Of a stretch of 64,000 nucleotides of DNA, positions 2,196 to 60,941 are shown in pieces. The stretch's first letter is position 1. Each line of letters begins with the position of its first letter. The DNA lies in IMG/VR virus record IMGVR_UViG_3300030329_004647, positions 124,001-188,000 of that record, one strand, 5' to 3'. Position numbers and translations under genes: made by a program. The notes below the pieces were generated by a model. The model was not told the DNA's origin and did no database searches. It saw only the letters and a list, made by a program, of their open reading frames with translations.

Positions 2196-2834
2196 TTATC
2201 TTTTTGAAGCGTGATATCCCGCTAATATTGATTTACAATGCTTTTCACTCTTACATTTTCTCCATACACCAAGCTTAGGGTCGTTATCATCTAAAATAAC
2301 CCAACCACCAGCTCTTTTTCTAATACAACCTTTTGGTGAGTCTTCACAGTAGTTTCCACCTTTCTTTTCTTTTAATATTCTTTTTAATCTTTCTACAATA
2401 GTTTTAACTTTTTTTGTAGATTCATTAGCTCCGAATCCCATCATTCCGTGTGCTGGACTATCTGGGTTAGAATCGTCACCCATTCCATCATCAGCCATAT
2501 CATCTTCATCATGTGGTGTTAACTGACCTGTTAGTTTTTCACCAGCCACTTTTTGTAAATTACTAATATCCTCACCCATTTCCTGAGAGATTTTTTTTCT
2601 TCTATTGGCTAAGTACTTGTCTGAGCTATCGACATCACCATCATTATCTATGTCCGCGTCCTCTTTTCCTACAGGGTCTAATTTGGTTTCACCCATCTCC
2701 TGTTTTACTCTTCCAGTTCCTATCATTCCCATATTACCCATGCTCGATATATTATTACCCATTTTTGCTTTTACAGTTTTTTCTATAAGAGCTATGAGTT
2801 CTGATTCTGTTAGTCTAATTTTTTTTGTTTTCAT
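2196..2834 (-). CDS. Putative internal head protein with Dx[DN]xDG motif
   Basis: N-terminal IRLTESELIALIEK; DPVGKEDADIDNDGDVDSSDKYL motif; charged, low complexity. Confidence 0.5.
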   Translation of the reverse strand: MKTKKIRLTESELIALIEKTVKAKMGNNISSMGNMGMIGTGRVKQEMGETKLDPVGKEDADIDNDGDVDSSDKYLANRRKKISQEMGEDISNLQKVAGEKLTGQLTPHDEDDMADDGMGDDSNPDSPAHGMMGFGANESTKKVKTIVERLKRILKEKKGGNYCEDSPKGCIRKRAGGWVILDDNDPKLGVWRKCKSEKHCKSILAGYHASKR

Positions 2835-4321
2835 ATTTCATTTACTACTTGGAATTTTATTACTCTTCTATAAGTATTTACTTGTTGGTTTGAAATCGCT
2901 TTTAAATCTATAAAATACTCATTTGGTATCATATCTCTAGTGTCTACTAGGAAATAGTTTTGGTTAAACGCTCTATTAACAGGAGTCCATGGTTGTGTTT
3001 CTACTTCTGTTGTTCCCTGTCTAACATATAATCTATAGTCTAAATTTTCTATAGCTACGTGTTCATTTACTGTGTATGGTACTCTTACAGATACTATTAC
3101 TTTTCTAATATCATCATTGGTTACCTTTTCATCTAATTTAATTCCAGATAAAGAAAATCCATATTCCTTAGGTAACTCATCATTAGTGCCGATTTGGTAA
3201 TAGGAAGTTTCTGGTAATATTGTAAATTCATTTGTTACATTAGATAAAGAAATATTATCTATAGACATATTTGACCATTGGTCTTGGAATAAACTAGGTG
3301 TTCCATATGTGTCTCCCGTGACATTTAACCCAACATAATAAACACCACAAGTACATTGTGTAGCTGTCATAGATGTATATACAACATCATCACAATCATA
3401 TATAGTTACTTGAGGTAAATTATCTAAATTAGTAGGTACCCCATTAGTGTTAACATACAAATACAATTTATTATTTTTTGATTTATAGAATTGATTTCTA
3501 TCGTCTTGTATTAAATCGTTATAATAAGTTAAAACATAAGGTTCATAAAAAGTTTGAGTATACTTTGTAAAAAACCCTACTGTGTAAGATTCTGTAAGTC
3601 CAGTTAACTCCTCAAATTCTACTGGATAAGACACAACATAAGTAATACCTGTTGTAATAGAAGTATCACCAGTCAACCTACGATTTATTTCGTCTGTCAT
3701 ATCAATAGAAATGTCTTCATTACCATTATCAAAAGATTGGGTTCCTAAGACTTCAAAAGTCGACGAATCATTACTTTGATAAGTTCCATGATAATCCCAA
3801 GGAGTTACCGTAGTAGCCGATAACCAATTACTAGGCCTTTGTGACCAAGTTCTATCCCACTCGGGAGCAAACATACCAGGAGCTTGTACAAAGTCATAAC
3901 CGATACCTTCGTCCCAAGTTACCCCAGTAACTTTTAATAGGTTTAAAATAAATGAACTAGCCCTATTTGAACCATTATTTAACTTATCCCTTAACAAGTC
4001 CTTATCAAACGAGGACGTATTAGTCATTTTTAATGTGTGTGAAACAGCACACTCACCAGTTAATATAATACAACCACTATCAACTTTTTCTTTAATAGCA
4101 GCAATATCTACATCAAAAATAAATCTAGAAAAGAAATTACCCGAAGAAAACGTATACCCTGTATTACCTCCACAGGTGTCCCCTGAGAGACCTGTATACT
4201 TACATGGGTTCGAGGTATCCCTACCATAGAAAAGTTCCATAACAGGGTTCTTTGCGGTGTTAACAAGGCTATTGTTAACAATAGTATTATTTTTTGAGAA
4301 GTATGATTTATAATAAGACAT
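2831..4321 (-). CDS. Putative virion structural (baseplate-region) protein
   Basis: 496 aa, beta-rich, Thr/Ser/Gly motifs, follows gp5-like gene, preceded by TATTTATT (4343-4336). Confidence 0.5.
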   Translation of the reverse strand: MSYYKSYFSKNNTIVNNSLVNTAKNPVMELFYGRDTSNPCKYTGLSGDTCGGNTGYTFSSGNFFSRFIFDVDIAAIKEKVDSGCIILTGECAVSHTLKMTNTSSFDKDLLRDKLNNGSNRASSFILNLLKVTGVTWDEGIGYDFVQAPGMFAPEWDRTWSQRPSNWLSATTVTPWDYHGTYQSNDSSTFEVLGTQSFDNGNEDISIDMTDEINRRLTGDTSITTGITYVVSYPVEFEELTGLTESYTVGFFTKYTQTFYEPYVLTYYNDLIQDDRNQFYKSKNNKLYLYVNTNGVPTNLDNLPQVTIYDCDDVVYTSMTATQCTCGVYYVGLNVTGDTYGTPSLFQDQWSNMSIDNISLSNVTNEFTILPETSYYQIGTNDELPKEYGFSLSGIKLDEKVTNDDIRKVIVSVRVPYTVNEHVAIENLDYRLYVRQGTTEVETQPWTPVNRAFNQNYFLVDTRDMIPNEYFIDLKAISNQQVNTYRRVIKFQVVNEI

Positions 4322-9631: not shown

Positions 9632-10432
9632 TTACGCTTCTGTTGTCTGATATTTTATTGGTCTATCCTGTGTGAAAAAATATTCTTTTTTAGCTGTGTC
9701 CACCCAAAATTTTGCTTCATTAGGTGAAAGCTTGTGCTTTGGATGGTTTTTATAATCCCAAAAAAGAGAATGCTCTCTCATATTTGTGTGTTTATAACCC
9801 ACCTTAGGTACAGTCATGATTTGAATATCGTTGTATGTAGCTCTTAATAAAAACTCATAAGAAAAAGTTAATTTAATATTAGATTTTAATCCCCCGATAT
9901 CTCTAAAACTTTCTGACCTCATCACCATTCCAGATGTTTGGAAATTTTGGTAATTAAGTAAAGTATTGTTGTCTAGGTACCCCATTTTTTCTGAGAATCC
10001 CATAGCCCATAAAGCTTCATTTGTGAAACCTAAAAATTCATTAGTTTCTGATGTTTCCACTACTAACGGGAAAAATAAATCCACATCTTCATAATAGTCT
10101 ATATATTGTTGTACATTTTTAAACCATATTTTAGAGTACTCATCATCAAACTCTAAAACAGAAAACCAATCTGTTTCTATATTATCCACTCCAAAATTTA
10201 TTTGTCCACTAAATGAAGAATCACCACTATTAAATAAAACATCAACATCTAAATTTTCTGGCTTTTCCCACTCTTCGAAAAATTTTATTATATCATTTTT
10301 AGCTGCATGTACAACTAATATTTTTTTAGGTTTATCAACCTGCTCCTCTAAGCTTTTAATGCATTTGGTAAATAAATTTTTAAACTCACCTGAAACATCA
10401 TTAACTGGTATAATTACTGTAATATCATTCAT
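9632..10432 (-). CDS. Glycosyltransferase family 2-like
   Basis: ITVIIPV start, INFGV..TDWFSVLEFDD (DxD-like), YEFLLRA. Confidence 0.75.
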   Translation of the reverse strand: MNDITVIIPVNDVSGEFKNLFTKCIKSLEEQVDKPKKILVVHAAKNDIIKFFEEWEKPENLDVDVLFNSGDSSFSGQINFGVDNIETDWFSVLEFDDEYSKIWFKNVQQYIDYYEDVDLFFPLVVETSETNEFLGFTNEALWAMGFSEKMGYLDNNTLLNYQNFQTSGMVMRSESFRDIGGLKSNIKLTFSYEFLLRATYNDIQIMTVPKVGYKHTNMREHSLFWDYKNHPKHKLSPNEAKFWVDTAKKEYFFTQDRPIKYQTTEA

Positions 10433-10437
10433 TTTAT

Positions 10438-11529
10438 TTAATTTTTAGCTTCTTCCATAACTGGACTTAATTTATTAATCATCATATTGATGTCTTCTAC
10501 TTTTTGAGTTTTAATACTTTCAAAATACCCTAACAAAGAATTCTTTTCTTTTTCTTGTGAAAACATTAAAGGTGTATTGGCTGTTTCATAGTATAACTCT
10601 TCAGGTAAAGTATCCTCCAACCAATTTTTCATATAAGCACCAATCATGTCTACAATTTTTAAATATTCGAATGTCCATAATCCATTATTTTCCGTTAACC
10701 AGTCAGGCTTTAATGTTGGTGCTAATCCGATTACTGGTGTTCCACACTGCATACTTTCTAAAGGAAAAGTACCCCAACCTGAAATTCTATCTACCCAAAC
10801 TGAAACACATGATTCAGAAAGTGATTCTGAAACAGCTTTTCTTGAAATATTTCTAATATCTCTAAAAGTAACCCATCTGTATTGTGGGAATTTAATATAA
10901 AAAGATTTTATAATCTTAACTGTATCTCTAGGGTCTCTAGTATGAATAGAAATTATAGGTTTTTTAGGTTCTTCCGTTTTTTTGAAGTATTCGGGTATGG
11001 AAGGTGTTACCACTTTTATATTTAAACTATTTTCTGTATAAAATTGCTCCAAATATTCTTTTTGTGAAGTAGTAGTAGTAATACAATGGTTTATACCATA
11101 ATTACCCCAACTAAATCCTGGTTGTAAAGTATCAAATTTGTAATCATAAGATTGACATAACATAATACGCGTACAAGGCATATTATTTGTTTGTTCTAAG
11201 ATATGACCAAATTTTTCAGGTATGATTACATAATCTGCTACTCCCACAGCTAAGTCTTGTTCTATAATAGCGTGTGGTAATGAAGAATATTCTTCACCCA
11301 ACCAATCGGTAACTGGTTTGTAATCTTTTTTATCATATAAAATAAAAGCGTTGTAATTATTTTCATTTAATATTTTAACCCATTCATAATTTACAGCTAC
11401 ACTCGCCATAGCTGTACCTTGTGTGTCAGGAGTTATAAAATAAATTTTACTTTCATTTTTATTTATTTTTTCCAGAGCCTCTGTTAATAGGGCTACTTTT
11501 TCTTCTGGTGTTTTTTGTTCGTTTTCCAT
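10438..11529 (-). CDS. GT-B (GT4-like) glycosyltransferase
   Basis: IIPE motif; SGWGTFPLESMQCGTPVIG matches the GT4 EgFGlp.lEama.G.PVI pattern. Confidence 0.7.
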   Translation of the reverse strand: MENEQKTPEEKVALLTEALEKINKNESKIYFITPDTQGTAMASVAVNYEWVKILNENNYNAFILYDKKDYKPVTDWLGEEYSSLPHAIIEQDLAVGVADYVIIPEKFGHILEQTNNMPCTRIMLCQSYDYKFDTLQPGFSWGNYGINHCITTTTSQKEYLEQFYTENSLNIKVVTPSIPEYFKKTEEPKKPIISIHTRDPRDTVKIIKSFYIKFPQYRWVTFRDIRNISRKAVSESLSESCVSVWVDRISGWGTFPLESMQCGTPVIGLAPTLKPDWLTENNGLWTFEYLKIVDMIGAYMKNWLEDTLPEELYYETANTPLMFSQEKEKNSLLGYFESIKTQKVEDINMMINKLSPVMEEAKN

Positions 11530-13105: not shown

Positions 13106-13271
13106 TTATAGTTTCTTTTTTAGTGTTTACTGTTATTACGCAAGGTATAGTCTCAATTCGTTCCATAAATTTACCGTAGATTACTTCAAATCTCTCATGT
13201 CTACTTACTAAACTAAAGGGAACCATTGGTTCTCCATGACCATAACTTACCATGTCCCATAATTCATACAT
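13098..13271 (-). CDS. Small hypothetical protein (57 aa, not in ORF track)
   Basis: MYELWDMVSYGHGEPMVPF...KETINE*; ATG overlaps the ugd stop and the end overlaps the phoH start. Confidence 0.55.
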   Translation of the reverse strand: MYELWDMVSYGHGEPMVPFSLVSRHERFEVIYGKFMERIETIPCVITVNTKKETINE

Positions 13272-14149
13272 TATATTTCATTTTTTTCAAGGTTATTAAT
13301 TATTGCTCTACCTTCCATTTTTTCCCAATCCTTGTTAGTCCTAACCATTGTATTAGTGTTATGTGTAGCATCTAACATAGGTGTTTTTATTAAAAGTTTA
13401 TTAGCTTCATGTCTTAACGCTAATAAATCTTTAGGAAAACAATGACCACCAAACCCAAAGTCACCATCTGGCCCAGGAACATTCCAATGTGAGTAACCTA
13501 AACGTTCATCTAATTTAGCATACTCAATTACTTTATCGTAATCAACACCTAACCCTTTACAAACATTATACATTTCATTTGCAAAAGACACTTTAGTAGC
13601 TAAAAAAGTATTAGTTAGATATTTTACCATTTCTGCATATGTAGAATCTGTTTTTACTACATGTACTTTTGGAAAAGCTTTAGAAAAAATAGGTTTAACT
13701 TTAGCGGTAACCTCATTAGGACCACCTAGAATTATTCGGTTTTGATTTTTATAGTCTTCTATTGAATTCGCTTCAGTTAGAAATTCTGGATTATATACTA
13801 AAGATACTCTATTAAATCCTTTTTGTAGTTTTTTAGTAGTTCCAGGGGGTATAGTAGATTTAAGAACAATTGTTCTAGTTTCGTTTCCATAATAATCTTT
13901 AATATCACAATAGTTATTTATTTCACTTAAAACCTCTTCCACAATACCAGTATAACACTTACCCTCATTATCCATAGGTGTTGGTAGACATAAAAAAATT
14001 ATTTTACACCTCTCAACAATATCAACTAGTGTGTTAGTACTAAATTCTGGTTTGTTTAAATCAAAAGTTAATATATTAAAATATTTTTGAAGACCTTCTT
14101 TAACAGCGGTTCCTACAAAACCCTGTCCAACTATTCCTATTTTATCCAT
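13271..14149 (-). CDS. ugd: UDP-glucose/GDP-mannose 6-dehydrogenase family protein (short form)
   Basis: GQGFVG, CLPTP, KSTIPPG, NPEFL, catalytic GFGGHCFPKD; lacks C-terminal UDP-binding domain. Confidence 0.85.
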   Translation of the reverse strand: MDKIGIVGQGFVGTAVKEGLQKYFNILTFDLNKPEFSTNTLVDIVERCKIIFLCLPTPMDNEGKCYTGIVEEVLSEINNYCDIKDYYGNETRTIVLKSTIPPGTTKKLQKGFNRVSLVYNPEFLTEANSIEDYKNQNRIILGGPNEVTAKVKPIFSKAFPKVHVVKTDSTYAEMVKYLTNTFLATKVSFANEMYNVCKGLGVDYDKVIEYAKLDERLGYSHWNVPGPDGDFGFGGHCFPKDLLALRHEANKLLIKTPMLDATHNTNTMVRTNKDWEKMEGRAIINNLEKNEI

Positions 14150-15005
14150 TTTTAATTTGTTCTATATAATTTTTTAAATTTATCTTAGGTTCCCAACCCA
14201 ACTTTTTAGTGTTAGTATTATCTAATATAACAGAAGATAAACGTTCACCCCTTCTTTCAGGAACCAAAACCCAGTTATCAGTAAACATAGAAGCAACATC
14301 TGCTAATTTCCAGTTTTTACCAGTACCTAACATATATTCACTATTAAAACCTTTTTCTATTGTCATAATAATACCATTAATGATATCGTCAATATGTGTA
14401 AAGTCACGTGACTGTGTTCCTGGGGAAACCACTGTTAATGGCTCACCTTTTTTATACTGTCCCTCAAAAATTCCTATTACCGCTTTATAATCACCTTCCA
14501 TAATTTGTTTAGGACCATATACGTTGTAAAAATAAACTATTTCATATTTTAGAGAATACCATTCACCAAAATTTTTAATTAATTCTACATTTTTAGCTTT
14601 AGTCCAAGAATACGGGGATAAATTTTCATCCTTACCATCATTACCAAACTTACTACTAGATGCTGAATAAATTAATTTAACGTTATTTTTATGACAAAAA
14701 TTAACTATTTTCATAGTACCGTAACCATTAGATTTTAAAACATAATCTATATCTTTAAAAGAATTAACAATTCTAGAGTACTCACCAAAATGAAAAATTA
14801 TATCAATATCGGGTTTAACCAATTCATCAATATCCCAAGTATTTCCCTTAATATAATTTACTCGTTTGTCGTTTATGTGGTTTTTAATGTTACCAGTAAA
14901 ATAATTGTCTAAAGAAGTTATATTGATATTTTTATAACGTGATAATAATTCTTCTATAAGTGAAGACCCAATAAATCCTGCTCCACCAGTTACTAATATT
15001 TTCAT
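14142..15005 (-). CDS. NAD-dependent epimerase/dehydratase
   Basis: TGGAGFIGS, YSWTK (YxxxK), YNVYGP, RDFTHIDD. Confidence 0.85.
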   Translation of the reverse strand: MKILVTGGAGFIGSSLIEELLSRYKNINITSLDNYFTGNIKNHINDKRVNYIKGNTWDIDELVKPDIDIIFHFGEYSRIVNSFKDIDYVLKSNGYGTMKIVNFCHKNNVKLIYSASSSKFGNDGKDENLSPYSWTKAKNVELIKNFGEWYSLKYEIVYFYNVYGPKQIMEGDYKAVIGIFEGQYKKGEPLTVVSPGTQSRDFTHIDDIINGIIMTIEKGFNSEYMLGTGKNWKLADVASMFTDNWVLVPERRGERLSSVILDNTNTKKLGWEPKINLKNYIEQIKNG

Positions 15006-16166
15006 TTATTTATCTATTCTTTTTATGATATCACAAACAAATTTAATATCATCATATGTTAAATTTGGATGATTAGGTAAATATAAAGCTTTATTATCTA
15101 TAATTTCAGCATTTGGAAGTGTTAACTCACCGTAAAGTTTAGAGTAAAATGGTTGTTTGCCCATAGAACCACAAATAAGTGGTCTAACCTCTACCCCATT
15201 AGACTCCAATTCCTCAACCAACTTATTTCTATTATTAGAAACATATGGAAAAGCAAAATTAGAGACAAAATAGTCACCAGATTGTTGTGGAAAATATGAT
15301 AAGTCTCCTAATAGTTCATGGTAAATACTGTAATTTTTATGTCTTAACCTAACAGTTTCGTCTAACTTATCAAGTTGTCCTAATCCTATATAAGCTTGTA
15401 AATCAGTTGCTCTCATATTAAATCCAGGCACATAAAAAGTGTATAACCCATTAAAATTACTAACCTCCCACTCATCTCTTAATTTTTTAGTTGAGGTGTC
15501 ACACAAATCTCTATCCCAACCATGACTTCTTAACATGAGAATTAAATCATAAATTTCTTTTTCATTTGTACAAATTAATCCACCTTCAATCGTTGACATG
15601 TGATGACCAAAGTATGTTGAAAAAGTAGACATCAAGCCAAAATTTCCCAAAGTCTTGTCTTGGAATTTAGACCCTAAACTTTCACACACATCTTCTAATA
15701 GTGAAACGTTATATTTTTCACACAAACTTACTATTTTATCCATTTCAGGAACTAATCCTAAAACAGAAACTAATATAAGAGCTTTAGGACTGTCCTTTTT
15801 AAAAATCTCCTCCAAATGATTAAGGTCGACCGATAGATTTTTTAAATCTACATCACATAAAACAGGTTTCAAACCTAATTGTATTACAGGTGATAAATCT
15901 GTAGCCCAAGATAAAGAAGGGACAACCACCTTATCTCCTATGTTTAATAGTCCTTTTTGTACTAGAACATATAACATAATTAAATTTGCTGAGGAACCAG
16001 AGTTGACAAATACACAATGTTTACAACCGAGCCATTTTGCAAATAATTTTTCGAATTCAACAGTCAGTGTATTTTTAGTTAACCTAGGATAAGTTTTTAA
16101 CCATTCTATTAATCTATCAATATCTTTATTGTCGATAGTATCTTTTACTAATTCTATTTTATTCAT
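15006..16166 (-). CDS. colD: GDP-4-keto-6-deoxy-D-mannose 3-dehydratase (ColD-like, DegT/PLP family)
   Basis: VNSGSSANL, EDVCESLG, STYFGHHMSTIEGG (His in place of PLP Lys), RSHGWDRD; adjacent to fcl/gmd. Confidence 0.75.
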   Translation of the reverse strand: MNKIELVKDTIDNKDIDRLIEWLKTYPRLTKNTLTVEFEKLFAKWLGCKHCVFVNSGSSANLIMLYVLVQKGLLNIGDKVVVPSLSWATDLSPVIQLGLKPVLCDVDLKNLSVDLNHLEEIFKKDSPKALILVSVLGLVPEMDKIVSLCEKYNVSLLEDVCESLGSKFQDKTLGNFGLMSTFSTYFGHHMSTIEGGLICTNEKEIYDLILMLRSHGWDRDLCDTSTKKLRDEWEVSNFNGLYTFYVPGFNMRATDLQAYIGLGQLDKLDETVRLRHKNYSIYHELLGDLSYFPQQSGDYFVSNFAFPYVSNNRNKLVEELESNGVEVRPLICGSMGKQPFYSKLYGELTLPNAEIIDNKALYLPNHPNLTYDDIKFVCDIIKRIDK

Positions 16167-17068
16167 ACGCCTCTAAGATTTGGGTAGGTTTTTACAAAAT
16201 GTTCTATTGTTTCTTTTAAACCCACCTCTATAGGGGTAAATTTAAAGTCTGGTACGTAAGACATTAATTTTTTATTACAACTAGGTTTTCTAAATTGACC
16301 ATCTGGTTTGTCGTCTTGCCATACTACTTTACCATCAAAACCCATGTTATTCACTATCAAATCCACCAAATCTTTAATAGATATTTCGTGTGAGGTTGAA
16401 AAAATTATTGGTTCAGATTCATCGTAATTCTCTAAAGCCCAATTAGTTAACTTACCAATATCTTTTGCGTATATAAATTCTCTTAATGGTTTTCCAGAAC
16501 CCCAGACCTTAAAATCGGTATTATTTTTTTTAGCTAAATAACATTTGTGTATAAGTGACGGTATTACGTGTCCACTATCTAAATTAAAATTATCATTAAG
16601 ACCATATATGTTTGTAGGTATTACACTTACAAAATCTAACTTATACTGGTCTCTATATACTTCAGTTTGTACATCTAACATTCTTTTAGCATAGGCATAA
16701 CCATAATTAGAAGAATGGGGTGCCCCCAAGTGAATCTTTTTTTCTGTTAAAGGGTACTCCACTGAGTCGGGAAATATACAAGTAGACAGGAAAGAAACCA
16801 CTTTCTCTACTTTATATAATCTACAAGCTTCTAATACGTTAGTATTTATCATAATGTTATCATAAAAAAACTCTCCTTTAGCTTTCATATTCCCACCGAC
16901 ACCGCCAACTCTAGCAGCAGCATGAATTACGTGTGTTGGTCGATGAGTTTCAAATATCTTCTTTACATCTGACCACTTTCTTAAGTCACCATCTTTAGAC
17001 CCTAATTTTATTTCCGCGTCTATAGTTGAACCAACTAACCCACTTCCGCCTGTAATTAATCTTTTCAT
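16163..17068 (-). CDS. fcl: GDP-L-fucose synthase / GDP-colitose synthase (Fcl/ColC)
   Basis: TGGSGLVG, AARVGG, LSTCIFP, YAYAKR, PTNIYG, WGSGKPLREF; start refined to MKRLITGG. Confidence 0.88.
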   Translation of the reverse strand: MKRLITGGSGLVGSTIDAEIKLGSKDGDLRKWSDVKKIFETHRPTHVIHAAARVGGVGGNMKAKGEFFYDNIMINTNVLEACRLYKVEKVVSFLSTCIFPDSVEYPLTEKKIHLGAPHSSNYGYAYAKRMLDVQTEVYRDQYKLDFVSVIPTNIYGLNDNFNLDSGHVIPSLIHKCYLAKKNNTDFKVWGSGKPLREFIYAKDIGKLTNWALENYDESEPIIFSTSHEISIKDLVDLIVNNMGFDGKVVWQDDKPDGQFRKPSCNKKLMSYVPDFKFTPIEVGLKETIEHFVKTYPNLRGV

Positions 17069-18039: not shown

Positions 18040-18041
18040 AA

Positions 18042-20876: not shown

Positions 20877-20877
20877 T

Positions 20878-21213
20878 TTAATTACCTTTATACGCTCTAA
20901 TTGAATTTATTTTATTTTCAGAATCAAATGTGATAATATCCGTCACTAATAATGTGTCAGTTTCATTTATAACTACTTCTATTTCACAAGCAACAGTATT
21001 GTCTTCTTGAAACATTTTACTTGGTCTAACTTCCACAGACTCAACCGCTTCAAAAATTTGTTCATTTGATTTTATAACATTATCTAATCCTTTTGAATTA
21101 ACCTCCCAATCACGTAAATAACAATCTTCTGAAAGAAGTTTTCTTAATCCATCTAAATCTTGATTGGAAAAAGTTTTAAAGTAGGTTAAACATATATTTT
21201 TTAAATTGTCCAT
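20878..21213 (-). CDS. SnoaL/NTF2-like protein
   Basis: YFKTFSNQDLDGLRKLLSEDC...IITFDSENKINSIRAY. Confidence 0.75.
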   Translation of the reverse strand: MDNLKNICLTYFKTFSNQDLDGLRKLLSEDCYLRDWEVNSKGLDNVIKSNEQIFEAVESVEVRPSKMFQEDNTVACEIEVVINETDTLLVTDIITFDSENKINSIRAYKGN

Positions 21214-24451: not shown

Positions 24452-24452
24452 T

Positions 24453-25808: not shown

Positions 25809-25820
25809 TCCTTTTAATTT

Positions 25821-45211: not shown

Positions 45212-47932
45212 ATGCACATCCCAACTCAAAAAGACATAGAACAATTTCTACACGGTAATGACCCAGAAAAATACATAGTATCCTTAGAATTTGGTTATCG
45301 TTCAGGTAAAATATACAAAATTAAAGAGGACCCTAAAAGAGGAAAAATTGTAGAACCCGATACCTTTGTACCATTTTGTTGGGTAGGTGACCTAAGAAGT
45401 AAAAATTTTTACCAAAATAATAAAATCCTCCAAAAACAAGCAATTTCTAAATATGGAATTTTAATAGAGCCATTAGACACAGCTAATGATGAAAGATTAG
45501 AATCTGGATTAAAATACTTAGTAAAAACAACCAAAACTTATAGAGACTTAGTTACGTTTTTTAGACAGGGTGGGTTGGAACCGTGGGCTCAAGACAATAG
45601 GGATACTATTCTTATTTTACCACCTATAGAACAATATTTAATACAAAAACAAAAAAGATTATTTAAAGGATTTGAAGATTATGATAATATCCATAGGTTT
45701 GTTTTTGATTTGGAGACCACAAGTTTAAGACCTTCAGATGGTAGAATTTTTATGATTGGTATGAAGGACAATAGAGGGTTCGAAAGAGTTATAGAAGTCA
45801 AAAACGATAATGAAAGTGAAAAAGACGCTATTATACAATTTTTTGAAACTATTGATGTAATACGACCAACAATTATTGGTGGTTATAATTCAGCAAACTT
45901 TGATTGGGATTGGTTATTTGAAAGAGCACAAATTTTAGGTGTAGACACCACTAAATTTAAAACACTTAATCCAAATGAAGGATATAAATTAAAAAAAGGG
46001 GTTTTAAAGTTAGGTGCAGAAGTAGAAGAATACAATCAACTTAAAATATGGGGATACAATTCAATTGATATAGCACACGCGGTTAGAAGAGCACAAACTA
46101 TTAATTCAGACATTAAAAGTTGGGGACTAAAATATATAACCCAATTCACCAATTCTGAAAAACCAAACAGGGTTTATGTTCCTGGTGATAAAATTGCGTC
46201 AACTTATAGTGAAAATAAAGAGTATTACCTAAATAAAGATAATGGTAACTATAAGTTAACCACAGAACCAGGTTTACACAATTTAGATAAAAAATTTCCT
46301 AATGTTTATGAAAAGGTTAATGGTGAGTATATTATAGAAAGATATCTTATGGACGATTTATGGGAAACAATGGAGATTGACGCTCAATTTAACCAAGCTT
46401 CCTTTCTACTAGCTTCTATGGTACCCACTACCTATGAAAGAGTTTCTACTATGGGGACAGCTACATTATGGAAAATGTTAATGTTAGCTTGGTCCTATAC
46501 AAATAATTTAGCTATCCCTAAGAAAAAGGAAAAAAGACCTTTTGTCGGCGGACTATCACGATTAGTTAAAACGGGTTACTCAACTAAAGTTTTAAAATTA
46601 GATTTTAGTTCACTATACCCTTCAATACAATTAGTACACGACGTATTCCCAGAATGTGATGTTACTGGAGCTATGAAATGTATGTTAAAATATTTTAGAG
46701 ATACTAGGATAAAATATAAAAATTTAGCTTCAGAATATTATGAAAAAGATAAAAAAAAGTCTGAATCTTTTGGGAGAAAACAACTACCTATTAAAATTTT
46801 TATTAATTCTATGTTTGGTTCTTTATCAGCACCTCAGGTATTCCCTTGGGGTGACATGGATAGAGGTGAAGAAGTTACTTGTACCGGAAGACAATATTTA
46901 AGACACATGATAAAATGGTTTATCTCAAAAGGATATAAACCTTTGGTGTTGGATACTGACGGTGTTAATTTCTCATCACCAGAAGGTGTCGAGTCACATT
47001 CATATGTGGGTGTCGGTAATAACGAATTGGTGAAAAACGGAAAGGAGTATACTGGTAGTGATGCTCATGTAGCTGAGTATAACGATTTATATATGGTGGG
47101 TGAAATGGGGTTAGATACAGACGGAACTTGGCCCTCTTGTATTAATGTAGCTAGAAAAAATTACGCTTTACTTACTGATAAAGGAAAGGTTAAATTGACG
47201 GGTAATTCTATTAAGTCTAAAAAAATGCAAGGATTTTTAGAAGATTTTATAGATAAAGGTTTAAGAATTTTATTAGAAGGTAGGGGTTCTGACTTTATAG
47301 AATATTATTATGAATATTTGACATTAATATTTAATAAAGAAATTCCATTAGCTAAAATAGCTAATAAGGCAAGAGTAAAACAAAGTATAGAAGCTTATAA
47401 AAAACGATGTACACAAAGAACCAAAGCTGGACATTTAATGGCAAGACAAGCTCATATGGAGTTAGCAATTAGTAAAAACTTAAAAGTAGATTTAGGAGAT
47501 ACAATACATTATGTTAATAATGGTAAAGTAATGTCTCATGGTGATGTACAAAGAAAAAAGAAAAAAGACGGTACTGAAGAAATTGTTTTAAATTGTTATT
47601 TAATTTCAGAAAATGAACTACAAAATGAAACAACAGGAGAATATAATGTACCAAGATGTATAGCCGCGTTCAATAAAAGAATCGAACCATTATTAGTTTG
47701 TTTTAAACCAGAAATTAGAGACAGTATTTTAGTTAAAAAACCAGAAGATAGACAATACTTCACAAGAAAACAATGTGAATTAATAAATGGTATAGCTAGA
47801 AGACAAGGGGACCAAGACTCTCTAGAAGAAATATTAGAGTTATCTCCAGAAGAAAAAATATTCTGGTCTCAAACTATGGGAGAAAGTGAAAATTATTTTC
47901 TTGAAAAATTAGGACTCTTTGATACCGTCTGA
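45212..47932 (+). CDS. Family B DNA polymerase
   Basis: Exonuclease FDLETT, GYNSANFD; polymerase DFSSLYPS, KIFINSMFG, DTDG, KNYA. Confidence 0.93.
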   Translation: MHIPTQKDIEQFLHGNDPEKYIVSLEFGYRSGKIYKIKEDPKRGKIVEPDTFVPFCWVGDLRSKNFYQNNKILQKQAISKYGILIEPLDTANDERLESGLKYLVKTTKTYRDLVTFFRQGGLEPWAQDNRDTILILPPIEQYLIQKQKRLFKGFEDYDNIHRFVFDLETTSLRPSDGRIFMIGMKDNRGFERVIEVKNDNESEKDAIIQFFETIDVIRPTIIGGYNSANFDWDWLFERAQILGVDTTKFKTLNPNEGYKLKKGVLKLGAEVEEYNQLKIWGYNSIDIAHAVRRAQTINSDIKSWGLKYITQFTNSEKPNRVYVPGDKIASTYSENKEYYLNKDNGNYKLTTEPGLHNLDKKFPNVYEKVNGEYIIERYLMDDLWETMEIDAQFNQASFLLASMVPTTYERVSTMGTATLWKMLMLAWSYTNNLAIPKKKEKRPFVGGLSRLVKTGYSTKVLKLDFSSLYPSIQLVHDVFPECDVTGAMKCMLKYFRDTRIKYKNLASEYYEKDKKKSESFGRKQLPIKIFINSMFGSLSAPQVFPWGDMDRGEEVTCTGRQYLRHMIKWFISKGYKPLVLDTDGVNFSSPEGVESHSYVGVGNNELVKNGKEYTGSDAHVAEYNDLYMVGEMGLDTDGTWPSCINVARKNYALLTDKGKVKLTGNSIKSKKMQGFLEDFIDKGLRILLEGRGSDFIEYYYEYLTLIFNKEIPLAKIANKARVKQSIEAYKKRCTQRTKAGHLMARQAHMELAISKNLKVDLGDTIHYVNNGKVMSHGDVQRKKKKDGTEEIVLNCYLISENELQNETTGEYNVPRCIAAFNKRIEPLLVCFKPEIRDSILVKKPEDRQYFTRKQCELINGIARRQGDQDSLEEILELSPEEKIFWSQTMGESENYFLEKLGLFDTV

Positions 47933-48874
47933 CGAAACAATCATCCAAGAAGACATAGGTTCATAATATCTAAACTCAACACAACTTTCAGGCAACATCT
48001 CTAAAGACTCCCATTGATTATCTATGTAACCTTTATCTGGAAATACGTTACAATTTGCTAATGATTTAATAACATATTTTTTAGCAACATGACTGTCTAA
48101 GGTATAATCTACATCCTCATCTAAGACAATAAAAACATCTTTTTCACAAAGACATTCTTTTTTAGTGGTTTCCGTTGAAGTATTAACCTTAGGTGTGTGA
48201 CCCTTTTTAAGATATTCTATTATAGCTAGAGTAAGTAATTTATAGTTAACTCCTCTAGGGGTCTTACCATCTATTTCATATGATACAAAATCAGTTAGTC
48301 CTAAATCATGTACTTCTTCCGCTATTAATCCTATAGCTTCTGTTTTATCTGCCTTCCACCTAAATCTTTTAGTTTCTAAACTTAATAAATTTTCTAAATT
48401 TAGAATATCCGTATTTCTAATATCGTATTTAACTCTTTTTGTCGAGGTATCAATGTATATGTTACCATTAGAATCAATACCTAAAGCGTCTTTATCCGCA
48501 GCCAATAAATTACTTCTATTAATTTGTAGGCATGTAGCACTAAACGCGGGAACATTTGGGTTACTCCTATCAATTGGGTCTAAAGGTGCTTGACCAATAG
48601 ATAAAACTGTAGTCGCACTTGTTATTCCTGAATATGTTGTTATAGCTACACCGTGAGTACAATCTTCAGTAAGATTTCCAGCACTATTATATATTGAACT
48701 ACCAACTAACAGTGTAGCTCCACTAGAACATCGTGTACATGCACTAGAATAACTAAATCCGTTATTCATAGCTCTGAAATTTCCTAAATAAAAAGTGTTA
48801 CCAGATAATATAGCGGTTTGACCACTATATTGCCTCATTTGTCTACTATAATCTATCTTTGTATAAAATCCCAT
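47909..48874 (-). CDS. Fibre-like protein with internal intramolecular chaperone (peptidase S74) domain
   Basis: STKRVKYDI...RFRWK...IGLIAEEV...VNYKLL; S/T/G-rich N-terminus. Confidence 0.65.
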   Translation of the reverse strand: MGFYTKIDYSRQMRQYSGQTAILSGNTFYLGNFRAMNNGFSYSSACTRCSSGATLLVGSSIYNSAGNLTEDCTHGVAITTYSGITSATTVLSIGQAPLDPIDRSNPNVPAFSATCLQINRSNLLAADKDALGIDSNGNIYIDTSTKRVKYDIRNTDILNLENLLSLETKRFRWKADKTEAIGLIAEEVHDLGLTDFVSYEIDGKTPRGVNYKLLTLAIIEYLKKGHTPKVNTSTETTKKECLCEKDVFIVLDEDVDYTLDSHVAKKYVIKSLANCNVFPDKGYIDNQWESLEMLPESCVEFRYYEPMSSWMIVSSDGIKES

Positions 48875-56855: not shown

Positions 56856-59800
56856 ATGGCTAACGGTAATAATAGAGTATTCGTATCTCCAGGGGTATAC
56901 ACCTCGGAAAAAGATTTAAGTTTTGTAGCACAGAGTGTTGGTGTTACAACATTAGGTTTGGTCGGAGAGACCAAAAAAGGGCCAGCTTTTGAACCAATCT
57001 TTGTAAGTAATTATAGTGACTTTACAACTAGATTTGGTAGTACATCAGCTGACAAATTTGTTGATACACAAATTCCTAAACACGAATTAGCATTTATAGC
57101 AAAATCTTACTTATCACAATCAAATCAATTGTTTGTGACAAGAGTATTAGGATTAAATGGTTATGATGCAGGACCATCTTGGTCAATAACAACAATCGGT
57201 GAAGTAGACCCACTATACGTTTCTGCTGCAACATCAGCTCAAACAACGAGTAACTGGAGTGACATTATTTACATTCCAATGACCTCAACTACCGCTACGC
57301 CAGACGGAATATATTTAACATATAACTCTGCGACAGGAAAGTTTAGTGACCCTATCACTGATATGACAACATTTGGGGGTGCCAATTTCCCAATTCAAAA
57401 TTACCAACTAACAGGCCAAACATTTATTAATGGGTATGGAACTACTTTAGGTACTTTTATTGATGAAATAACCTCTTTTGTTAACACAGTAAATGGTGGG
57501 GACAATATGTCTTGGGATGGTTCAGGACTAAGTCAATACTGGTATTATGGTGTATTAGGTACAGGAACAACTGTTGGTGGTGAAGGAGCAAATAGTTTTT
57601 GTGAACATTACGCTAACACGTGGATGACAGGTAATACATCAGGATTATCCATTCAAGCAATAGACCATGAAAATAGATTAGCTGTTGACGCTTCAAACTT
57701 CTATGATGACCAAAATGATGGTTGGTATGACACTTTATTCGAGTATGAATATGGTGAAGGTGCTAACTGTTACTGTACTTCTTATTCAGGTTCTTCATTT
57801 GATATGTTTGGTTATTCAGCTTTAACAGCTCAAACATATATAGATGAAGTTGACTTAAGTACTAGTGGAGCAAGTACATTCTTTGCTGGTGGACAATTTA
57901 ATAATGACCCAACATCAGGAGGAACAAGTACAGAATGGTCAGGAGCTACAGGAGTAAATGGAACAGGTGGACAAGCTGTAATATCGTTTACGGCTACTAG
58001 TAGTGGTGGTCCAGAAACTTGGGCATACAGAATTGGTTCAACATCAGCTAACGCAACAGGTGTAGTAGCTAATGTATGGAGTTCCCTATACCAAACACCA
58101 GTGGGAACATATGATAGTATAGGACCTGTAACGACACATCCTTATGTACCATCTGATTTTGACGAGGTATTATCAGGAGGAACAGCATCCACAACAACAG
58201 TATTAAAGAGTAATCCATATCCAGTACCATTAACGCCATTCGATTTCGCGAAGAGTGGTACAACTTGTGATACTAGTATAGGAGCTTACTCAGCTGTTTC
58301 AGTAATTTATAGTGGATTTGCTAATATTGGTAGTTTAGTAGGTGGTAACTTAGGTGGAGCAGGAACTGGATTCGACCAAGGTAATCTATCTTCAGGTATT
58401 TCACATACCTTTGTTGGTTTCTCTGGAGCTGACGGACCAAACTCATATTCTGGGACACTTGCTGTTAATATGGTATTCTATAGTGCTGATTGTCAATCAC
58501 AAAATCTGTTAACATTACAATTAAGTGGTTGTGCAGCTGAATATCAAAATGTAAGTGCAGACACTGAATATCACAACTTAGTAGTGGCAACAATGAGAGC
58601 TAGAGGACAAAGTTCACTTTCTACAGGAGGACCAGTCTATACAATTAGTGGTTCATCATCATCCTCAACAGGAGCTTACGGTGATGTAACATTTAATTGT
58701 TTAGGAGCTTACCAACCAATAGTTGATGACCCATTCTTTAATTTTGGTATAAGTGCTAGAACGGATGGTGGAGCAACATATAACTTTGATGTGAGCATGA
58801 ATACATCATCTAAAAATTACCTACCAAAAGTATTAGGTAGAAATGTATTTGATAAAAAAATGGAGGAAGTTCCTATTTTTGTTGAGGAAGTTTACCCTAA
58901 TATCCTAAAATATGGATTTAATAGAAATAGAATTAGAGGCCTAAACTGTTGTTTATTAAAATTACCAGCAGCAAGATGGAACAATACAGGTATGGATTCT
59001 ATAGGTTGGTACATGCAACAATGGCAAACACCAGAAACACCTTACGTAGTTTCAGAATTACGAGGTGAGGATGTATATAGACTATTTAAATTTGTTTCTA
59101 TTTCAGACGGTACAGAAGCAAATAGAGAATATAAAGTATCAATTATAAACATTTCATTTGAAAGATTAGAGTTTGATGTATTAGTTAGAGATTTCTATGA
59201 TAGTGACGCTAGTCCTGTTGTTTATGAAAAATTCACAAGATGTAGTTTAGACCCATCATTACCTTCTTTTATAGGAAGAAAAATAGGTACTTCAGATGGT
59301 CAATACGAATTAAGGTCTAAATACACAATGTTATATTTAACTGAAGAGGTTTTAGATGGAACACTTAAAGACGCTGTTCCAGCAGGTTTTGATTACTACG
59401 ATTTTAGAAATTATGAAAACGGTGCTGGTAAAACGTGTAGAGCTATTCCACCGATGTTAAAATATAAAACAAAATACTTTACGGCTGGAGAAGTAGTTTA
59501 TGACCCACCTTATGATAACGCTGACGGAAGTGCTAACTCTTATATATCACCAGGTGACAATGTGAGAAAAACATATTTAGGTATTTCTGACACAGTAGGT
59601 GCAGCTATAGATTTTGATTTCTTCGAGTATAAAGGTAAGAAAACACCAGTATCGGTTTGTACAGATGTTAATGGTGTAAGTTGGGGAACAATCAGAAAAG
59701 GTTTCCATATGGATTCAGGAGCTACAATAATTGTTGCGGGTTCTGGAACGTATATAACACAATCGGGTACAACTCTTAGTGGTGACTCTATCTTTGAGGT

Positions 59801-60941
59801 GGGAGCAGCAGACTTTAGAGGTGAACCAGCATCAAGTAATCACCCATACAAAAAACTAAATTCTCGTAAATTTACTTTAGCACCTTATGGTGGTTTTGAT
59901 GGATGGGATGAATACCGTAAGTTTAGAAGTAATGGTGATTCCTATAGACTTGGACTACAAGGATTCTTAAATGGAGCGTGTAATGACGCGGTTTACCCGT
60001 CAGCTGTAGGAGACGGTTCATTTAAAGCTCTAAGTAGTACTGAAGCAAATACGGATTATTTTGCATACCTTAGAGGTGTACAAACATTCCAAAACCCAGA
60101 AGCGGTTAATATTAATGTATTTGCTACACCAGGTATTGACTACGTTAACAACCAATCTCTAGTTAAAGAATCTATAGATATGGTAGAAAGTCAAAGAGCT
60201 GACTCGTTATATATTACGACAACACCTGACTTTAACATGTACGTACCAACATCTTCAGATGTGACAAATCAAATATCACCAACAGAAGCTGGAGATAATT
60301 TAGAGGACTCACTAATAGATTCTAACTATACGGCAACGTATTATCCATGGATTTTGGTTAGAGATGACAATAGTAATAAACAAATCTATATACCACCAAC
60401 ATCAGAGGTTACTAGAAACTTAGCATTAACTGATAATGTAGCATTCCCTTGGTTCGCTTCAGCAGGTTATACACGTGGTTTAGTAAACGCACAAAGAGCT
60501 AGAAGAAAACTGACTCAGGACGAAAGAGATACGTTATATGTTGATAGAATTAACCCAATAGCGACATTCTCAGATGTAGGACCAATTATTTTTGGACAGA
60601 AAACTCTACAAATTAAAGAGTCTGCTCTTGACAGAATTAATGTTAGAAGATTATTATTACAAACAAGAAAACTAATTTCCGCGGTAGCTGTTAGACTACT
60701 ATTCGAACAAAATGATGATGTAGTAAGACAACAATTCTTAGACCTAGTTAACCCTATATTAGATTCTATTAGAAGAGATAGAGGTTTAACAGACTTTAGA
60801 GTTGTACTTTCTAACGACCCAGAAGAAATTGATAGAAATGAATTAAATGGTAAGATTTACTTAAAACCTACAAGAGCGTTAGAGTTTATCTTCATAGAAT
60901 TCTTGATAACACCAACTGGAGCAGAATTTGAATCAGTTTAA
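56856..60941 (+). CDS. Contractile tail sheath protein (gp18-like) with large insertion
   Basis: VSPGVYTSEKDLS, GETKKGPAFEP, WFASAGYTRG, RINPI, GQKTLQ, LDRINVRRLL, IYLKPTRALEFI. Confidence 0.92.
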   Translation: MANGNNRVFVSPGVYTSEKDLSFVAQSVGVTTLGLVGETKKGPAFEPIFVSNYSDFTTRFGSTSADKFVDTQIPKHELAFIAKSYLSQSNQLFVTRVLGLNGYDAGPSWSITTIGEVDPLYVSAATSAQTTSNWSDIIYIPMTSTTATPDGIYLTYNSATGKFSDPITDMTTFGGANFPIQNYQLTGQTFINGYGTTLGTFIDEITSFVNTVNGGDNMSWDGSGLSQYWYYGVLGTGTTVGGEGANSFCEHYANTWMTGNTSGLSIQAIDHENRLAVDASNFYDDQNDGWYDTLFEYEYGEGANCYCTSYSGSSFDMFGYSALTAQTYIDEVDLSTSGASTFFAGGQFNNDPTSGGTSTEWSGATGVNGTGGQAVISFTATSSGGPETWAYRIGSTSANATGVVANVWSSLYQTPVGTYDSIGPVTTHPYVPSDFDEVLSGGTASTTTVLKSNPYPVPLTPFDFAKSGTTCDTSIGAYSAVSVIYSGFANIGSLVGGNLGGAGTGFDQGNLSSGISHTFVGFSGADGPNSYSGTLAVNMVFYSADCQSQNLLTLQLSGCAAEYQNVSADTEYHNLVVATMRARGQSSLSTGGPVYTISGSSSSSTGAYGDVTFNCLGAYQPIVDDPFFNFGISARTDGGATYNFDVSMNTSSKNYLPKVLGRNVFDKKMEEVPIFVEEVYPNILKYGFNRNRIRGLNCCLLKLPAARWNNTGMDSIGWYMQQWQTPETPYVVSELRGEDVYRLFKFVSISDGTEANREYKVSIINISFERLEFDVLVRDFYDSDASPVVYEKFTRCSLDPSLPSFIGRKIGTSDGQYELRSKYTMLYLTEEVLDGTLKDAVPAGFDYYDFRNYENGAGKTCRAIPPMLKYKTKYFTAGEVVYDPPYDNADGSANSYISPGDNVRKTYLGISDTVGAAIDFDFFEYKGKKTPVSVCTDVNGVSWGTIRKGFHMDSGATIIVAGSGTYITQSGTTLSGDSIFEVGAADFRGEPASSNHPYKKLNSRKFTLAPYGGFDGWDEYRKFRSNGDSYRLGLQGFLNGACNDAVYPSAVGDGSFKALSSTEANTDYFAYLRGVQTFQNPEAVNINVFATPGIDYVNNQSLVKESIDMVESQRADSLYITTTPDFNMYVPTSSDVTNQISPTEAGDNLEDSLIDSNYTATYYPWILVRDDNSNKQIYIPPTSEVTRNLALTDNVAFPWFASAGYTRGLVNAQRARRKLTQDERDTLYVDRINPIATFSDVGPIIFGQKTLQIKESALDRINVRRLLLQTRKLISAVAVRLLFEQNDDVVRQQFLDLVNPILDSIRRDRGLTDFRVVLSNDPEEIDRNELNGKIYLKPTRALEFIFIEFLITPTGAEFESV

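What the first reader, a model, noticed from the sequence alone, without database searches (positions are those of the whole stretch)
2831..60941. Recurring [S/T]-[G/A]-x-[S/T] motif across unrelated virion proteins: candidate glycosylation sequon
Seen: the same short motif is dense in non-homologous structural proteins. 2831: SGDT, TGYT, TGVT, SATT, TGIT, TGLT. 4344: TGQT, SGAT, SATT. 41072: TGMT, SAST, SGYT, SAET, TGCT, TGDT, SGAT, SANT. 43884: SGTT, SGGT, SGAT, SGMT, TAIT, SAVT, TADT. 47909: SGQT, SGNT, SACT, SGIT. Sheath insert: SAAT, SAQT, TGQT, TGNT, SALT, SGGT, SADT. It appears largely absent from the enzymes and tail tube. Inference: convergence on one tetrapeptide in likely surface-exposed regions, in a genome with about 13 GTs, fits a phage-specific O-glycosylation sequon distinct from the Bacteroidota D-(S/T)-(A/L/V/I/M/T) sequon.
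Basis: partly seen in the sequence, partly recalled or inferred. Interest (0 to 1): 0.88.

Follow-up and report, generated by a model that had tools for sequence, protein, structure and literature searches.

The report
Recurring Ser/Thr-Gly/Ala-x-Thr motif in phage tail proteins
Five unrelated tail proteins of an uncultured marine jumbo phage carry about five times more copies of the short motif Ser/Thr-Gly/Ala-x-Thr than chance allows; this fits a tag for phage-made sugar attachment, but that is not shown.

Summary
[ST][GA]x[ST], almost entirely as [ST][GA]xT, is 4-8 times over-represented in five mutually non-homologous proteins. These are p2831, p41072, p43884, the S74 fibre p47909 and the roughly 890-aa insert of the giant tail sheath. 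The excess survives local-composition shuffles. Six permuted-order controls are flat. The other 57 proteins of the window sit at expectation (23 observed, 21.6 expected). An unbiased scan of all spaced patterns ranks SA.T, TG.T and SG.T first. p4344 is not significant.

The excess recurs in 51 sheath homologues, 120 p41072 homologues and about 100 close p2831 homologues. It is absent from T4 and nearly absent from pelagiphage HTVC008M. One deep clade of p2831 homologues has no motif.

In a confident AlphaFold model of p2831 all nine sites lie in loops of varied context.

An acceptor sequon for phage-encoded glycosyltransferases is the best single reading (confidence about 0.4), and it is unproven. 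Two syntenic glycosyltransferases occur equally in motif-free relatives. In p43884 the motif sits in a periodic fibre repeat, where a structural role suffices. No glycan evidence exists.

The parts
2831..4321 (-). p2831, 496 aa, made of several beta-sandwich (Ig/FN3-like) domains and encoded in the T4-like structural module. It has 9 motif copies (8 as [ST][GA]xT) at aa 43, 46, 54, 132, 168, 217, 224, 240 and 335.
   Evidence: Counts. AlphaFold2 pLDDT 93.5 with all sites in coil. Foldseek finds tandem Ig/FN3/macroglobulin-like sandwiches and uncharacterised myovirus proteins. Sites are conserved in about 100 close homologues, 633 observed against 131 expected. They are absent from a deep clade of the family. 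Relatives sit beside Gp23, the gp21 protease and the T4 portal.
It has 4 copies, which is not significant in this genome.
   Evidence: 4 observed against 1.75 expected, z 1.1-1.7. The family shows a weak 2.5-fold excess in the motif-rich lineage (90 against 36.4) and none in the motif-poor lineage.
41072..43837 (+). p41072, 921 aa and cysteine-rich (30 Cys), probably a lectin-domain tail or baseplate protein. It has 21 motif copies.
   Evidence: In 120 homologues there are 1524 copies against 267 expected, and 111 of 120 have z>3. Copies are spread over 255 alignment columns, with about 10% in columns shared by at least half the sequences. The ESM Atlas lead is Laminin_G_3/ConA-like phage proteins. 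No Pfam, PHROG or PDB hit.
43884..44765 (+). p43884, 293 aa, a gp9/gp10-like fibre candidate. It has 19 copies, mostly in an approximately 8-residue periodic repeat, hydrophobic-[ST][GA]xT-xxx, over aa 58-160.
   Evidence: The Atlas lead is T4_gp9_10_N / Mtd_N. No homologue turned up in the word-indexed search. The positional orthologue in L084 shares the N-terminus but has 14-residue AxG[ST][GA][NT]T repeats that resemble YadA-head repeats (my comparison from memory), 15 observed against 3.7 expected.
47909..48874 (-). Tail-fibre-type protein with a C-terminal Peptidase_S74 intramolecular chaperone domain. It has 6 copies, all in the N-terminal stalk (aa 17-89).
   Evidence: Pfam PF13884 at aa 144-194 and PHROG tail and tail-fibre hits. 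Counts.
56856..60941 (+). Giant tail sheath, 1361 aa. All 26 copies are inside the approximately 890-aa insert (aa 111-1000) and none in the conserved core.
   Evidence: Pfam and PHROG sheath hits cover only aa 1065-1359. Insert against core. All 51 full-length homologues are enriched (11-22 observed against 3-7 expected), with six columns shared by more than 55% of them. The AlphaFold2 model was unusable, pLDDT 43.
9632..11529 (-). A GT2-family glycosyltransferase (9632-10432) and a GT1-like glycosyltransferase (10438-11529) beside the late-sigma-like gene and the structural genes. They are candidate modifying enzymes; this is inferred only.
   Evidence: Pfam hits, weak for the GT1-like protein. 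Homologues are syntenic with p2831 homologues in about 68% of loci in both the motif-rich and the motif-free lineage.
13271..36825 (-). Sugar-nucleotide synthesis and glycosyltransferase island. It is a possible donor and elongation machinery; this is inferred only.
   Evidence: The island holds a UDP-Glc dehydrogenase, three epimerases/dehydratases, a GDP-Man 4,6-dehydratase, two DegT aminotransferases, nucleotidyltransferases, two GT10, two GT25 and a GT2_5+GT4 fusion. Homologues of the sugar enzymes lie near p2831 homologues in 27/80 motif-rich against 4/80 motif-poor loci.
37090..38322 (-). GT-B (RfaG/GT1-like) glycosyltransferase of a family found only in viruses, 3 kb from p41072. It is a candidate modifying enzyme; this is inferred only.
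   Evidence: PHROG 7162, E 5e-34. Atlas clusters are 96-100% viral. It keeps the same position next to the p41072 homologue in relative L084.

Best explanation
hydrophobic-[ST]-[GA]-x-T is a short linear recognition motif. It was acquired in surface loops and fibre repeats of outward-facing tail proteins in one lineage of marine T4-like jumbo myoviruses. The most likely reader is a phage-encoded cytoplasmic glycosyltransferase that O-glycosylates a Ser or Thr of the motif before or during tail assembly. The sugar-nucleotide island would supply the donors, possibly 6-deoxyhexose or amino sugars.

Shown: the motif, its specificity to these proteins, its conservation across relatives, its loop location in p2831, and the presence of glycosyltransferase and sugar genes.

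Inferred: that any enzyme reads the motif, that the modification is a glycan, which residue is the acceptor, and which glycosyltransferase acts.
For: 1. The enrichment depends on residue order and on all four positions. It survives local-composition shuffles and comes out on top in an unbiased pattern scan.
2. It is confined to five non-homologous proteins. The other 57 proteins are at expectation, including the tail tube, which in a contractile tail lies inside the sheath (established tail architecture). In the sheath, only the insert carries the motif.
3. The motif is not intrinsic to the fold. p2831 homologues of the same family split into a supported clade of 30 diverse representatives with 0-1 copies and a motif-bearing remainder. 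At the window's sites the motif-free homologues have P-E/Q-x-D/E, N-R-T-T or D-S-D-D, while flanking residues are conserved.
4. In the confident p2831 model the nine sites sit in varied contexts: strand ends, a bulge, a helix C-cap and long loops. All have the G/A position in coil. Ala is accepted at position 2, and SA.T is the most enriched pattern. From general knowledge of turn geometry, that argues against a Gly-dependent tight turn.
5. Positions 1 and 4 exchange S and T across homologues, so the hydroxyl is what is conserved.
6. In p41072 the density is maintained in 120 homologues while positions turn over.
7. Eight glycosyltransferase-domain proteins and about 11 sugar-nucleotide enzymes are encoded. 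Sugar enzymes lie near p2831 homologues far more often in the motif-rich lineage (27/80 against 4/80).
8. Tail and fibre proteins rich in Ser, Thr and Gly in T4 and in pelagiphage HTVC008M show no comparable excess.
9. There is a precedent for phage-encoded virion O-glycosylation, in mycobacteriophages (Freeman et al. 2023, as cited in PMC12619734).
Against: There is no direct evidence of any modification.

The GT2/GT1 pair next to the structural genes is equally common beside motif-free p2831 homologues. The association with sugar genes is one clade-level contrast limited to 10-kb flanks.

There is no covariation between p2831 and p4344 motif excess within the clade (rho -0.34).

In p43884 and its L084 orthologue the motif is a unit of periodic fibre repeats, where structure alone explains it.

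Several sites in p2831 and the sheath are strictly conserved, which also fits a structural role.

A non-virion sigma-like protein carries one or two conserved copies in the same lineage.

In other phages the same statistic is inflated by tandem-repeat proteins.

The glycosyltransferase island could instead serve DNA or host-surface modification.
Confidence: 0.4

Rival explanations
1. The motif is a purely structural element with no modification. A small-residue turn or cap (Ser/Thr hydroxyl capping, Gly/Ala, then a beta-branched Thr that starts or ends a strand) would be favoured in beta-rich tail proteins and fibre repeats of this lineage, for folding or trimer packing.
For: - p43884 shows an approximately 8-residue periodicity. 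Its L084 orthologue embeds the motif in 14-residue repeats that resemble YadA-head repeats.
- The S74 fibre carries all its copies in the stalk upstream of the chaperone domain.
- A hydrophobic residue is preferred at position -1, 33 of 64 against 20.8 expected.
- All p2831 sites lie at the edges of secondary-structure elements.
- Many sites are positionally conserved.
- Repeat proteins of other phages, such as LRR and fibre repeats, carry the same tetrapeptide as part of their repeat unit.
Against: - The same fold exists without the motif in a large clade.
- The contexts in p2831 are varied: a helix C-cap, long loops and a bulge.
- Ala at position 2 is as enriched as Gly.
- T4 beta-helices, fibres and sheath, and the HTVC008M fibres, lack the excess.
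- There is no obvious reason why five unrelated folds in one lineage would settle on one order-specific tetrapeptide.
Confidence: 0.33
2. The motif is a recognition site for something other than a glycosyltransferase. Candidates are another modification (phosphorylation, acylation, nucleotidylation), an assembly chaperone, or a functional surface such as a carbohydrate-binding Thr/Ser array.
For: The same evidence for a trans-acting reader applies. p41072 resembles lectin-domain proteins, and the affected proteins are all tail-exterior components.
Against: No kinase or other protein-modifying enzyme was recognised among the window's ORFs. Only 64 kb of a genome of at least 232 kb was examined. 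Nothing points to one of these alternatives specifically.
Confidence: 0.17
3. The pattern is a statistical or phylogenetic artefact: a pattern picked by eye, hidden internal repeats, or inheritance that inflates the counts.
For: The homologue counts are not independent. Tandem-repeat proteins produce high z-scores elsewhere. p4344 was a false inclusion.
Against: An unbiased scan recovers the motif as the top three patterns. Order-permuted controls are flat. The five proteins are non-homologous and lack BLAST-detectable repeats. The same positional orthologues are enriched in a 42-46%-identical relative. The 57 control proteins sit exactly at expectation.
Confidence: 0.05

Closest known systems
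Mycobacteriophage virion O-glycosylation (Freeman et al. 2023, Cell Host Microbe; cited in PMC12619734, the paper itself not held)
   Same: Phage-encoded glycosyltransferases are thought to modify Ser/Thr of virion proteins in the cytoplasm. Here too, glycosyltransferase genes lie near the structural genes.
   Different: In mycobacteriophages the glycans sit on C-terminal extensions of the capsid and tail-tube subunits, as stated in PMC12619734. To my knowledge no defined tetrapeptide is described there. Here the tail tube is motif-free, the sites are internal loops of tail-exterior proteins, and no modification has been demonstrated.
Bacteroidota general O-glycosylation sequon D-(S/T)-(A/I/L/V/M/T)
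   Same: It is a short three- or four-residue acceptor motif with a hydroxyl residue followed by a small or aliphatic residue.
   Different: The sequence is different. D[ST][AILVMT] is at expectation in these proteins (11 observed, 13.2 expected). From established knowledge, that system acts in the periplasm on exported proteins, whereas phage tails assemble in the cytoplasm.
Autotransporter heptosylation (AIDA-I/TibA by Aah/TibC) and BclA collagen-like GXT O-glycosylation (from memory; not tested here)
   Same: In these systems the glycosylation sites are embedded in short structural repeats of fibrous or beta-helical surface proteins. This parallels p43884 and the G-x-T triplets such as TGLTGDT.
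   Different: No homologues of those enzymes were identified. The repeats here are shorter, and most motif copies are not in repeats.
Chlorovirus PBCV-1 major capsid glycosylation (from memory)
   Same: A virus encodes its own cytoplasmic glycosylation machinery and uses non-canonical acceptor sites rich in Thr.
   Different: That virus infects a eukaryote, its glycans are N-linked, and the protein and glycosyltransferase sets differ.
Fibre and beta-helix sequence repeats (T4 gp5 VxGxxxxx octads; YadA-head-type 14-mers)
   Same: p43884 and its orthologue share the periodicity (about 8 or 14 residues), the small residue at the kink and the flanking hydrophobic residue.
   Different: T4 gp5, gp12 and gp34-37 show no [ST][GA]xT excess. 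Most motif copies in p2831, p41072 and the sheath are aperiodic.

Membership tests
Phage-encoded virion protein O-glycosylation system | The phage genome encodes glycosyltransferases, and usually sugar-nucleotide enzymes as well | tested here: met
   There are 8 glycosyltransferase-domain proteins and about 11 sugar-nucleotide enzymes.
Phage-encoded virion protein O-glycosylation system | The candidate acceptor proteins are virion components | tested here: inconclusive
   The sheath and the S74 fibre are confirmed by Pfam and PHROG hits. p43884, p41072 and p2831 rest only on Atlas leads, fold similarity and synteny with the T4-type structural module.
Phage-encoded virion protein O-glycosylation system | A glycan is covalently attached to Ser/Thr of the proteins | not testable with these tools
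   This needs mass spectrometry or glycan staining of virions or of co-expressed proteins.
Phage-encoded virion protein O-glycosylation system | The modification depends on a particular phage glycosyltransferase; co-occurrence of motif and glycosyltransferase serves as a proxy | tested here: inconclusive
   The GT2/GT1 pair occurs in 53/80 motif-rich against 54-56/80 motif-poor loci, so there is no association. Sugar-nucleotide enzymes occur in 27/80 against 4/80, but that is one phylogenetic contrast within 10-kb flanks.
Linear acceptor sequon (in the sense of N-x-S/T or D-S/T-A) | Order-specific short motif enriched beyond composition in the target proteins only | tested here: met
Linear acceptor sequon (in the sense of N-x-S/T or D-S/T-A) | Sites are surface-exposed and independent of the fold | tested here: inconclusive
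   In p2831 all nine sites are in coil, in varied contexts, and the motif-free clade has hydrophilic residues at those columns. No coordinates were available to compute solvent accessibility. The sheath model failed. p43884 is periodic.
Bacteroidota D-(S/T)-(A/I/L/V/M/T) O-glycosylation targets | Enrichment or presence of that sequon in the candidate proteins | tested here: not met
   11 observed against 13.2 expected.
Beta-helix or fibre structural repeat | The motif recurs with a fixed period inside a repeat unit | tested here: inconclusive
   This is met for p43884 (about 8 aa) and its L084 orthologue (about 14 aa). It is not met for p2831, p41072 or the sheath, which have no internal repeats and irregular spacing.

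The most novel reading that the evidence does not exclude
hydrophobic-[ST]-[GA]-x-T would be the first defined acceptor sequon of a phage-encoded cytoplasmic protein O-glycosylation system. It would decorate the outer tail surface (sheath insert, fibres, baseplate-associated proteins) of a widespread lineage of marine T4-like jumbo myoviruses. Glycan coats on phage tails could then be predicted from sequence alone.
Probability: 0.33. Interest if true: 0.85.

Novelty: new variant of a known kind. Interest (0 to 1): 0.62.

Why it matters
To my knowledge, phage virion glycosylation has been shown experimentally only in a few systems and without a predictive sequence rule. The full-text searches run here found no such rule either.

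If this motif marks glycan attachment, glycosylated tail surfaces could be predicted from sequence for hundreds of uncultured marine jumbo phages. The family searches found at least 536 sheath relatives, at least 596 p41072 relatives and more than 3500 p2831 relatives.

It would also give a function to the large 'LPS-like' sugar islands of marine phages, and it would offer a compact tag for glycoengineering.

If the motif proves to be structural, it is still an unusual convergent element shared by five folds. The contrast between the motif-rich and motif-free clades of one well-modelled protein makes a clean system for testing either idea.

Tried and rejected
- AlphaFold2 of the sheath (aa 1-1200, 39-sequence alignment) gave pLDDT 43 and was not used.
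- Megablast of 20 kb and tblastn of p2831 against cultured phages found nothing. The sheath matched cultured phages almost only through its conserved N- and C-terminal parts.
- PDB sequence searches for p43884, p41072, p2831 and GT-B 37090 gave nothing meaningful.
- Foldseek of p2831 found only generic tandem Ig/FN3/macroglobulin-like sandwiches.
- The word-indexed homologue search found no relative of p43884.
- A DNA-level cause was rejected because the codons are diverse.
- Shared domains or internal duplication were rejected for four of the five proteins.
- A generic property of phage fibres, or of tail proteins rich in Ser, Thr and Gly, was rejected using T4 and HTVC008M.
- Using the flanks of motif-free p2831 homologues as a test of a 'genome-wide trait' was only partly informative. 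Their motif-rich ORFs turned out to be tandem-repeat proteins (LRR, coiled coil, fibre repeats). Their sheaths are only weakly enriched, 5-6 observed against 1.6 expected.
- Within-clade covariation between p2831 and p4344 was absent.
- The Freeman 2023 paper is not held in the library.
- Literature searches found no described phage sequon of this kind.
- The window has no tRNA genes and no Rfam hits.

Full report
**What the window is.**
The window is a low-GC (about 31%) stretch of IMG/VR contig IMGVR_UViG_3300030329_004647, which is 232 kb long. The window covers contig positions 124001-188000. It encodes these phage proteins:
- a family-B DNA polymerase
- an SNF2 helicase
- PhoH
- a gp55-like sigma protein
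- a gp13-like adaptor
- a tail tube
- a 1361-aa tail sheath
- an S74-chaperone fibre
- a Mom-family protein and a superoxide dismutase

Between 9.6 and 38.3 kb it carries 8 recognisable glycosyltransferase proteins: one GT2, one GT1-like, two GT10, two GT25, a GT2_5+GT4 fusion and a GT-B of a virus-only family. It also carries about 11 sugar-nucleotide enzymes.

The nearest cultured relatives, matched mostly through the conserved sheath core, are a Microcystis phage, Flavobacterium phages, pelagiphage HTVC008M and T4-like cyanophages. The host is unknown.

All the listed tetrapeptides exist. Against within-protein shuffles, [ST][GA]x[ST] is enriched in five proteins:
- p2831: 9 observed, 1.5 expected
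- p41072: 21 observed, 3.8 expected
- p43884: 19 observed, 5.9 expected
- p47909: 6 observed, 1.3 expected
- sheath: 26 observed, 7.8 expected

p4344 is not enriched (4 observed, 1.75 expected).

Shuffling inside 30- or 12-residue blocks keeps z at 3.3-8. Six order-permuted patterns are flat, apart from a weaker excess of [ST][ST].[GA] in the sheath (z 2.8-3.8). Thr, not Ser, is required at position 4.

An unbiased scan of all spaced di- and tri-residue patterns in the four aperiodic proteins puts SA.T, TG.T and SG.T in the top three places. Pooled [ST][GA].T is 46 observed against 9.1 expected. With a hydrophobic residue at position -1 it is 23 against 2.8. Without Ser/Thr at position 1 it is 25 against 32.7.

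The other 57 proteins have 23 observed against 21.6 expected. The five proteins are not homologous to one another and have no BLAST-detectable internal repeats. They encode the motif with diverse codons. In the sheath all copies lie in the approximately 890-aa insert.

**The excess is a family-wide, lineage-structured trait.**
- Sheath: all 51 distinct full-length homologues (about 55% identity; 536 relatives in IMG/VR) are enriched. Six positions are shared by more than 55% of them and the rest are lineage-specific.
- p41072: 120 homologues at 31-71% identity hold 1524 copies against 267 expected. The copies are spread over 255 alignment columns.
- p2831: close homologues hold 633 copies against 131 expected, at conserved sites where S and T interchange at positions 1 and 4.
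- p2831, diverse representatives: 35 of 118 have no copy at all. A maximum-likelihood tree places 30 of the low-count representatives in one supported clade. At the window's sites those proteins carry hydrophilic loop residues, while flanking residues stay conserved.
- Relative L084, a 280-kb contig: the same four positional orthologues are enriched again.

Negative controls show no comparable excess:
- T4 structural proteins show none.
- The baseplate and fibre proteins of pelagiphage HTVC008M, which are very rich in Ser, Thr and Gly, total 91 observed against 64 expected, with a maximum z of 3.2.

**Structure.**
The sheath model failed, with pLDDT 43. p2831, modelled with a 143-sequence alignment, gave pLDDT 93.5 and pTM 0.91. 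It is a chain of beta-sandwich domains, which is a generic Ig/FN3/macroglobulin-like similarity.

All nine motif copies have their G/A position in coil. Their contexts differ: after a strand, in a hairpin bulge, at a helix C-cap and in long loops. I could not compute solvent accessibility because no coordinates are returned.

p43884 is different. Its copies follow an approximately 8-residue period, and its L084 orthologue embeds the motif in 14-residue AxG[ST][GA][NT]T repeats that resemble YadA-head repeats. There a structural reading is sufficient.

**Co-occurrence with glycosylation genes.**
I fetched 80 loci around motif-poor p2831 homologues and 80 around motif-rich ones.
- Homologues of GT2 9632 and GT1-like 10438 lie within 10 kb equally often, in 53 against 54-56 loci.
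- Sugar-nucleotide enzymes do so in 27 against 4 loci (Fisher p 5e-6). This is a single clade contrast.
- By family, the motif-rich lineage is enriched in p2831 (475 observed, 78.5 expected) and weakly in p4344 (90, 36.4). It is not enriched in p6429, the glycosyltransferases or PhoH. The motif-poor lineage is flat.
- Within-clade covariation is absent.
- The motif-rich ORFs in the motif-poor loci are tandem-repeat proteins. This is a warning that repeats inflate the statistic.

**Interpretation.**
Five points together favour a linear motif read by some trans-acting factor:
- the motif is order-specific;
- it is restricted to tail-exterior proteins;
- it is independent of the fold;
- it tolerates Ala at position 2;
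- its structural contexts are varied.

Given the gene content, and the mycobacteriophage precedent cited in PMC12619734, a phage glycosyltransferase is the most likely reader. I put this at about 0.4. A purely structural turn or repeat element gets about 0.33, another reader or function about 0.17, and an artefact about 0.05.

The Bacteroidota sequon and N-x-S/T are not enriched. Nothing here demonstrates a glycan. No paper in the library describes such a phage sequon.

Noticed in passing
window 56856-60941: The tail sheath is 1361 aa long. An insert of about 890 aa lies between the N-terminal ~110 residues and the conserved core. There are 536 relatives in IMG/VR, in two size classes (about 1047-1110 aa and about 1344-1375 aa).
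   Followed up: partly
window 13271-36825 (-): A sugar-nucleotide and glycosyltransferase island of about 24 kb holds a GDP-Man 4,6-dehydratase, two DegT aminotransferases, a UDP-Glc dehydrogenase, two GT10, two GT25 and a GT2_5+GT4 fusion. Seven ORFs inside it have no family hit (18042, 19112, 20082, 21201, 25821, 29918, 31407).
   Followed up: partly
window 62819-63445 (-); L086 5432-6448; L087 3341-4846: A Mom-family protein (DNA-modification family) is encoded here. In relatives a Mom homologue sits directly beside the Gp23 major capsid gene.
   Followed up: no
window 41072-43837: p41072 has 30 cysteines. Several lie in nearly invariant columns across 120 homologues, which is unusual for a protein made in the cytoplasm.
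   Followed up: no
window 37090-38322 (-): This GT-B glycosyltransferase belongs to a family that is 96-100% viral in the ESM Atlas. One related cluster (787 aa) carries a LAGLIDADG homing-endonuclease insertion.
   Followed up: no
window 8924-9625 (-): The gp55-like sigma protein is not a virion protein, yet it carries 1-2 conserved motif copies in the motif-rich lineage (47 observed against 5 expected over 54 homologues).
   Followed up: partly
window 36088-36825 (-) and 45212-47932 (+): A separate ORF resembling the PolB 3'-5' exonuclease domain exists in addition to the full family-B polymerase.
   Followed up: no
window 52037-52690 (-); 38997-39389 (-): The phage encodes an Fe/Mn superoxide dismutase and a small WYL-domain protein.
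   Followed up: no
window 47909-47932: The PolB gene and the S74 fibre gene converge, and their 3' ends overlap by 24 nt.
   Followed up: no
L148 605-2500; L099 6764-9979; L110 7667-9982: Large phage contigs (89-147 kb for L148 and L110, 24 kb for L099) that carry motif-free p2831 homologues encode tandem-repeat proteins just upstream: a Cys-rich BspA-type LRR protein, a long coiled-coil repeat protein and a fibre with repeats of about 110 aa.
   Followed up: partly
L084 4758-5465; L087 2625-3269: A Sulfotransfer_2-family gene lies next to the p2831 homologue in two relatives. This hints at another possible modification activity near the structural module.
   Followed up: no
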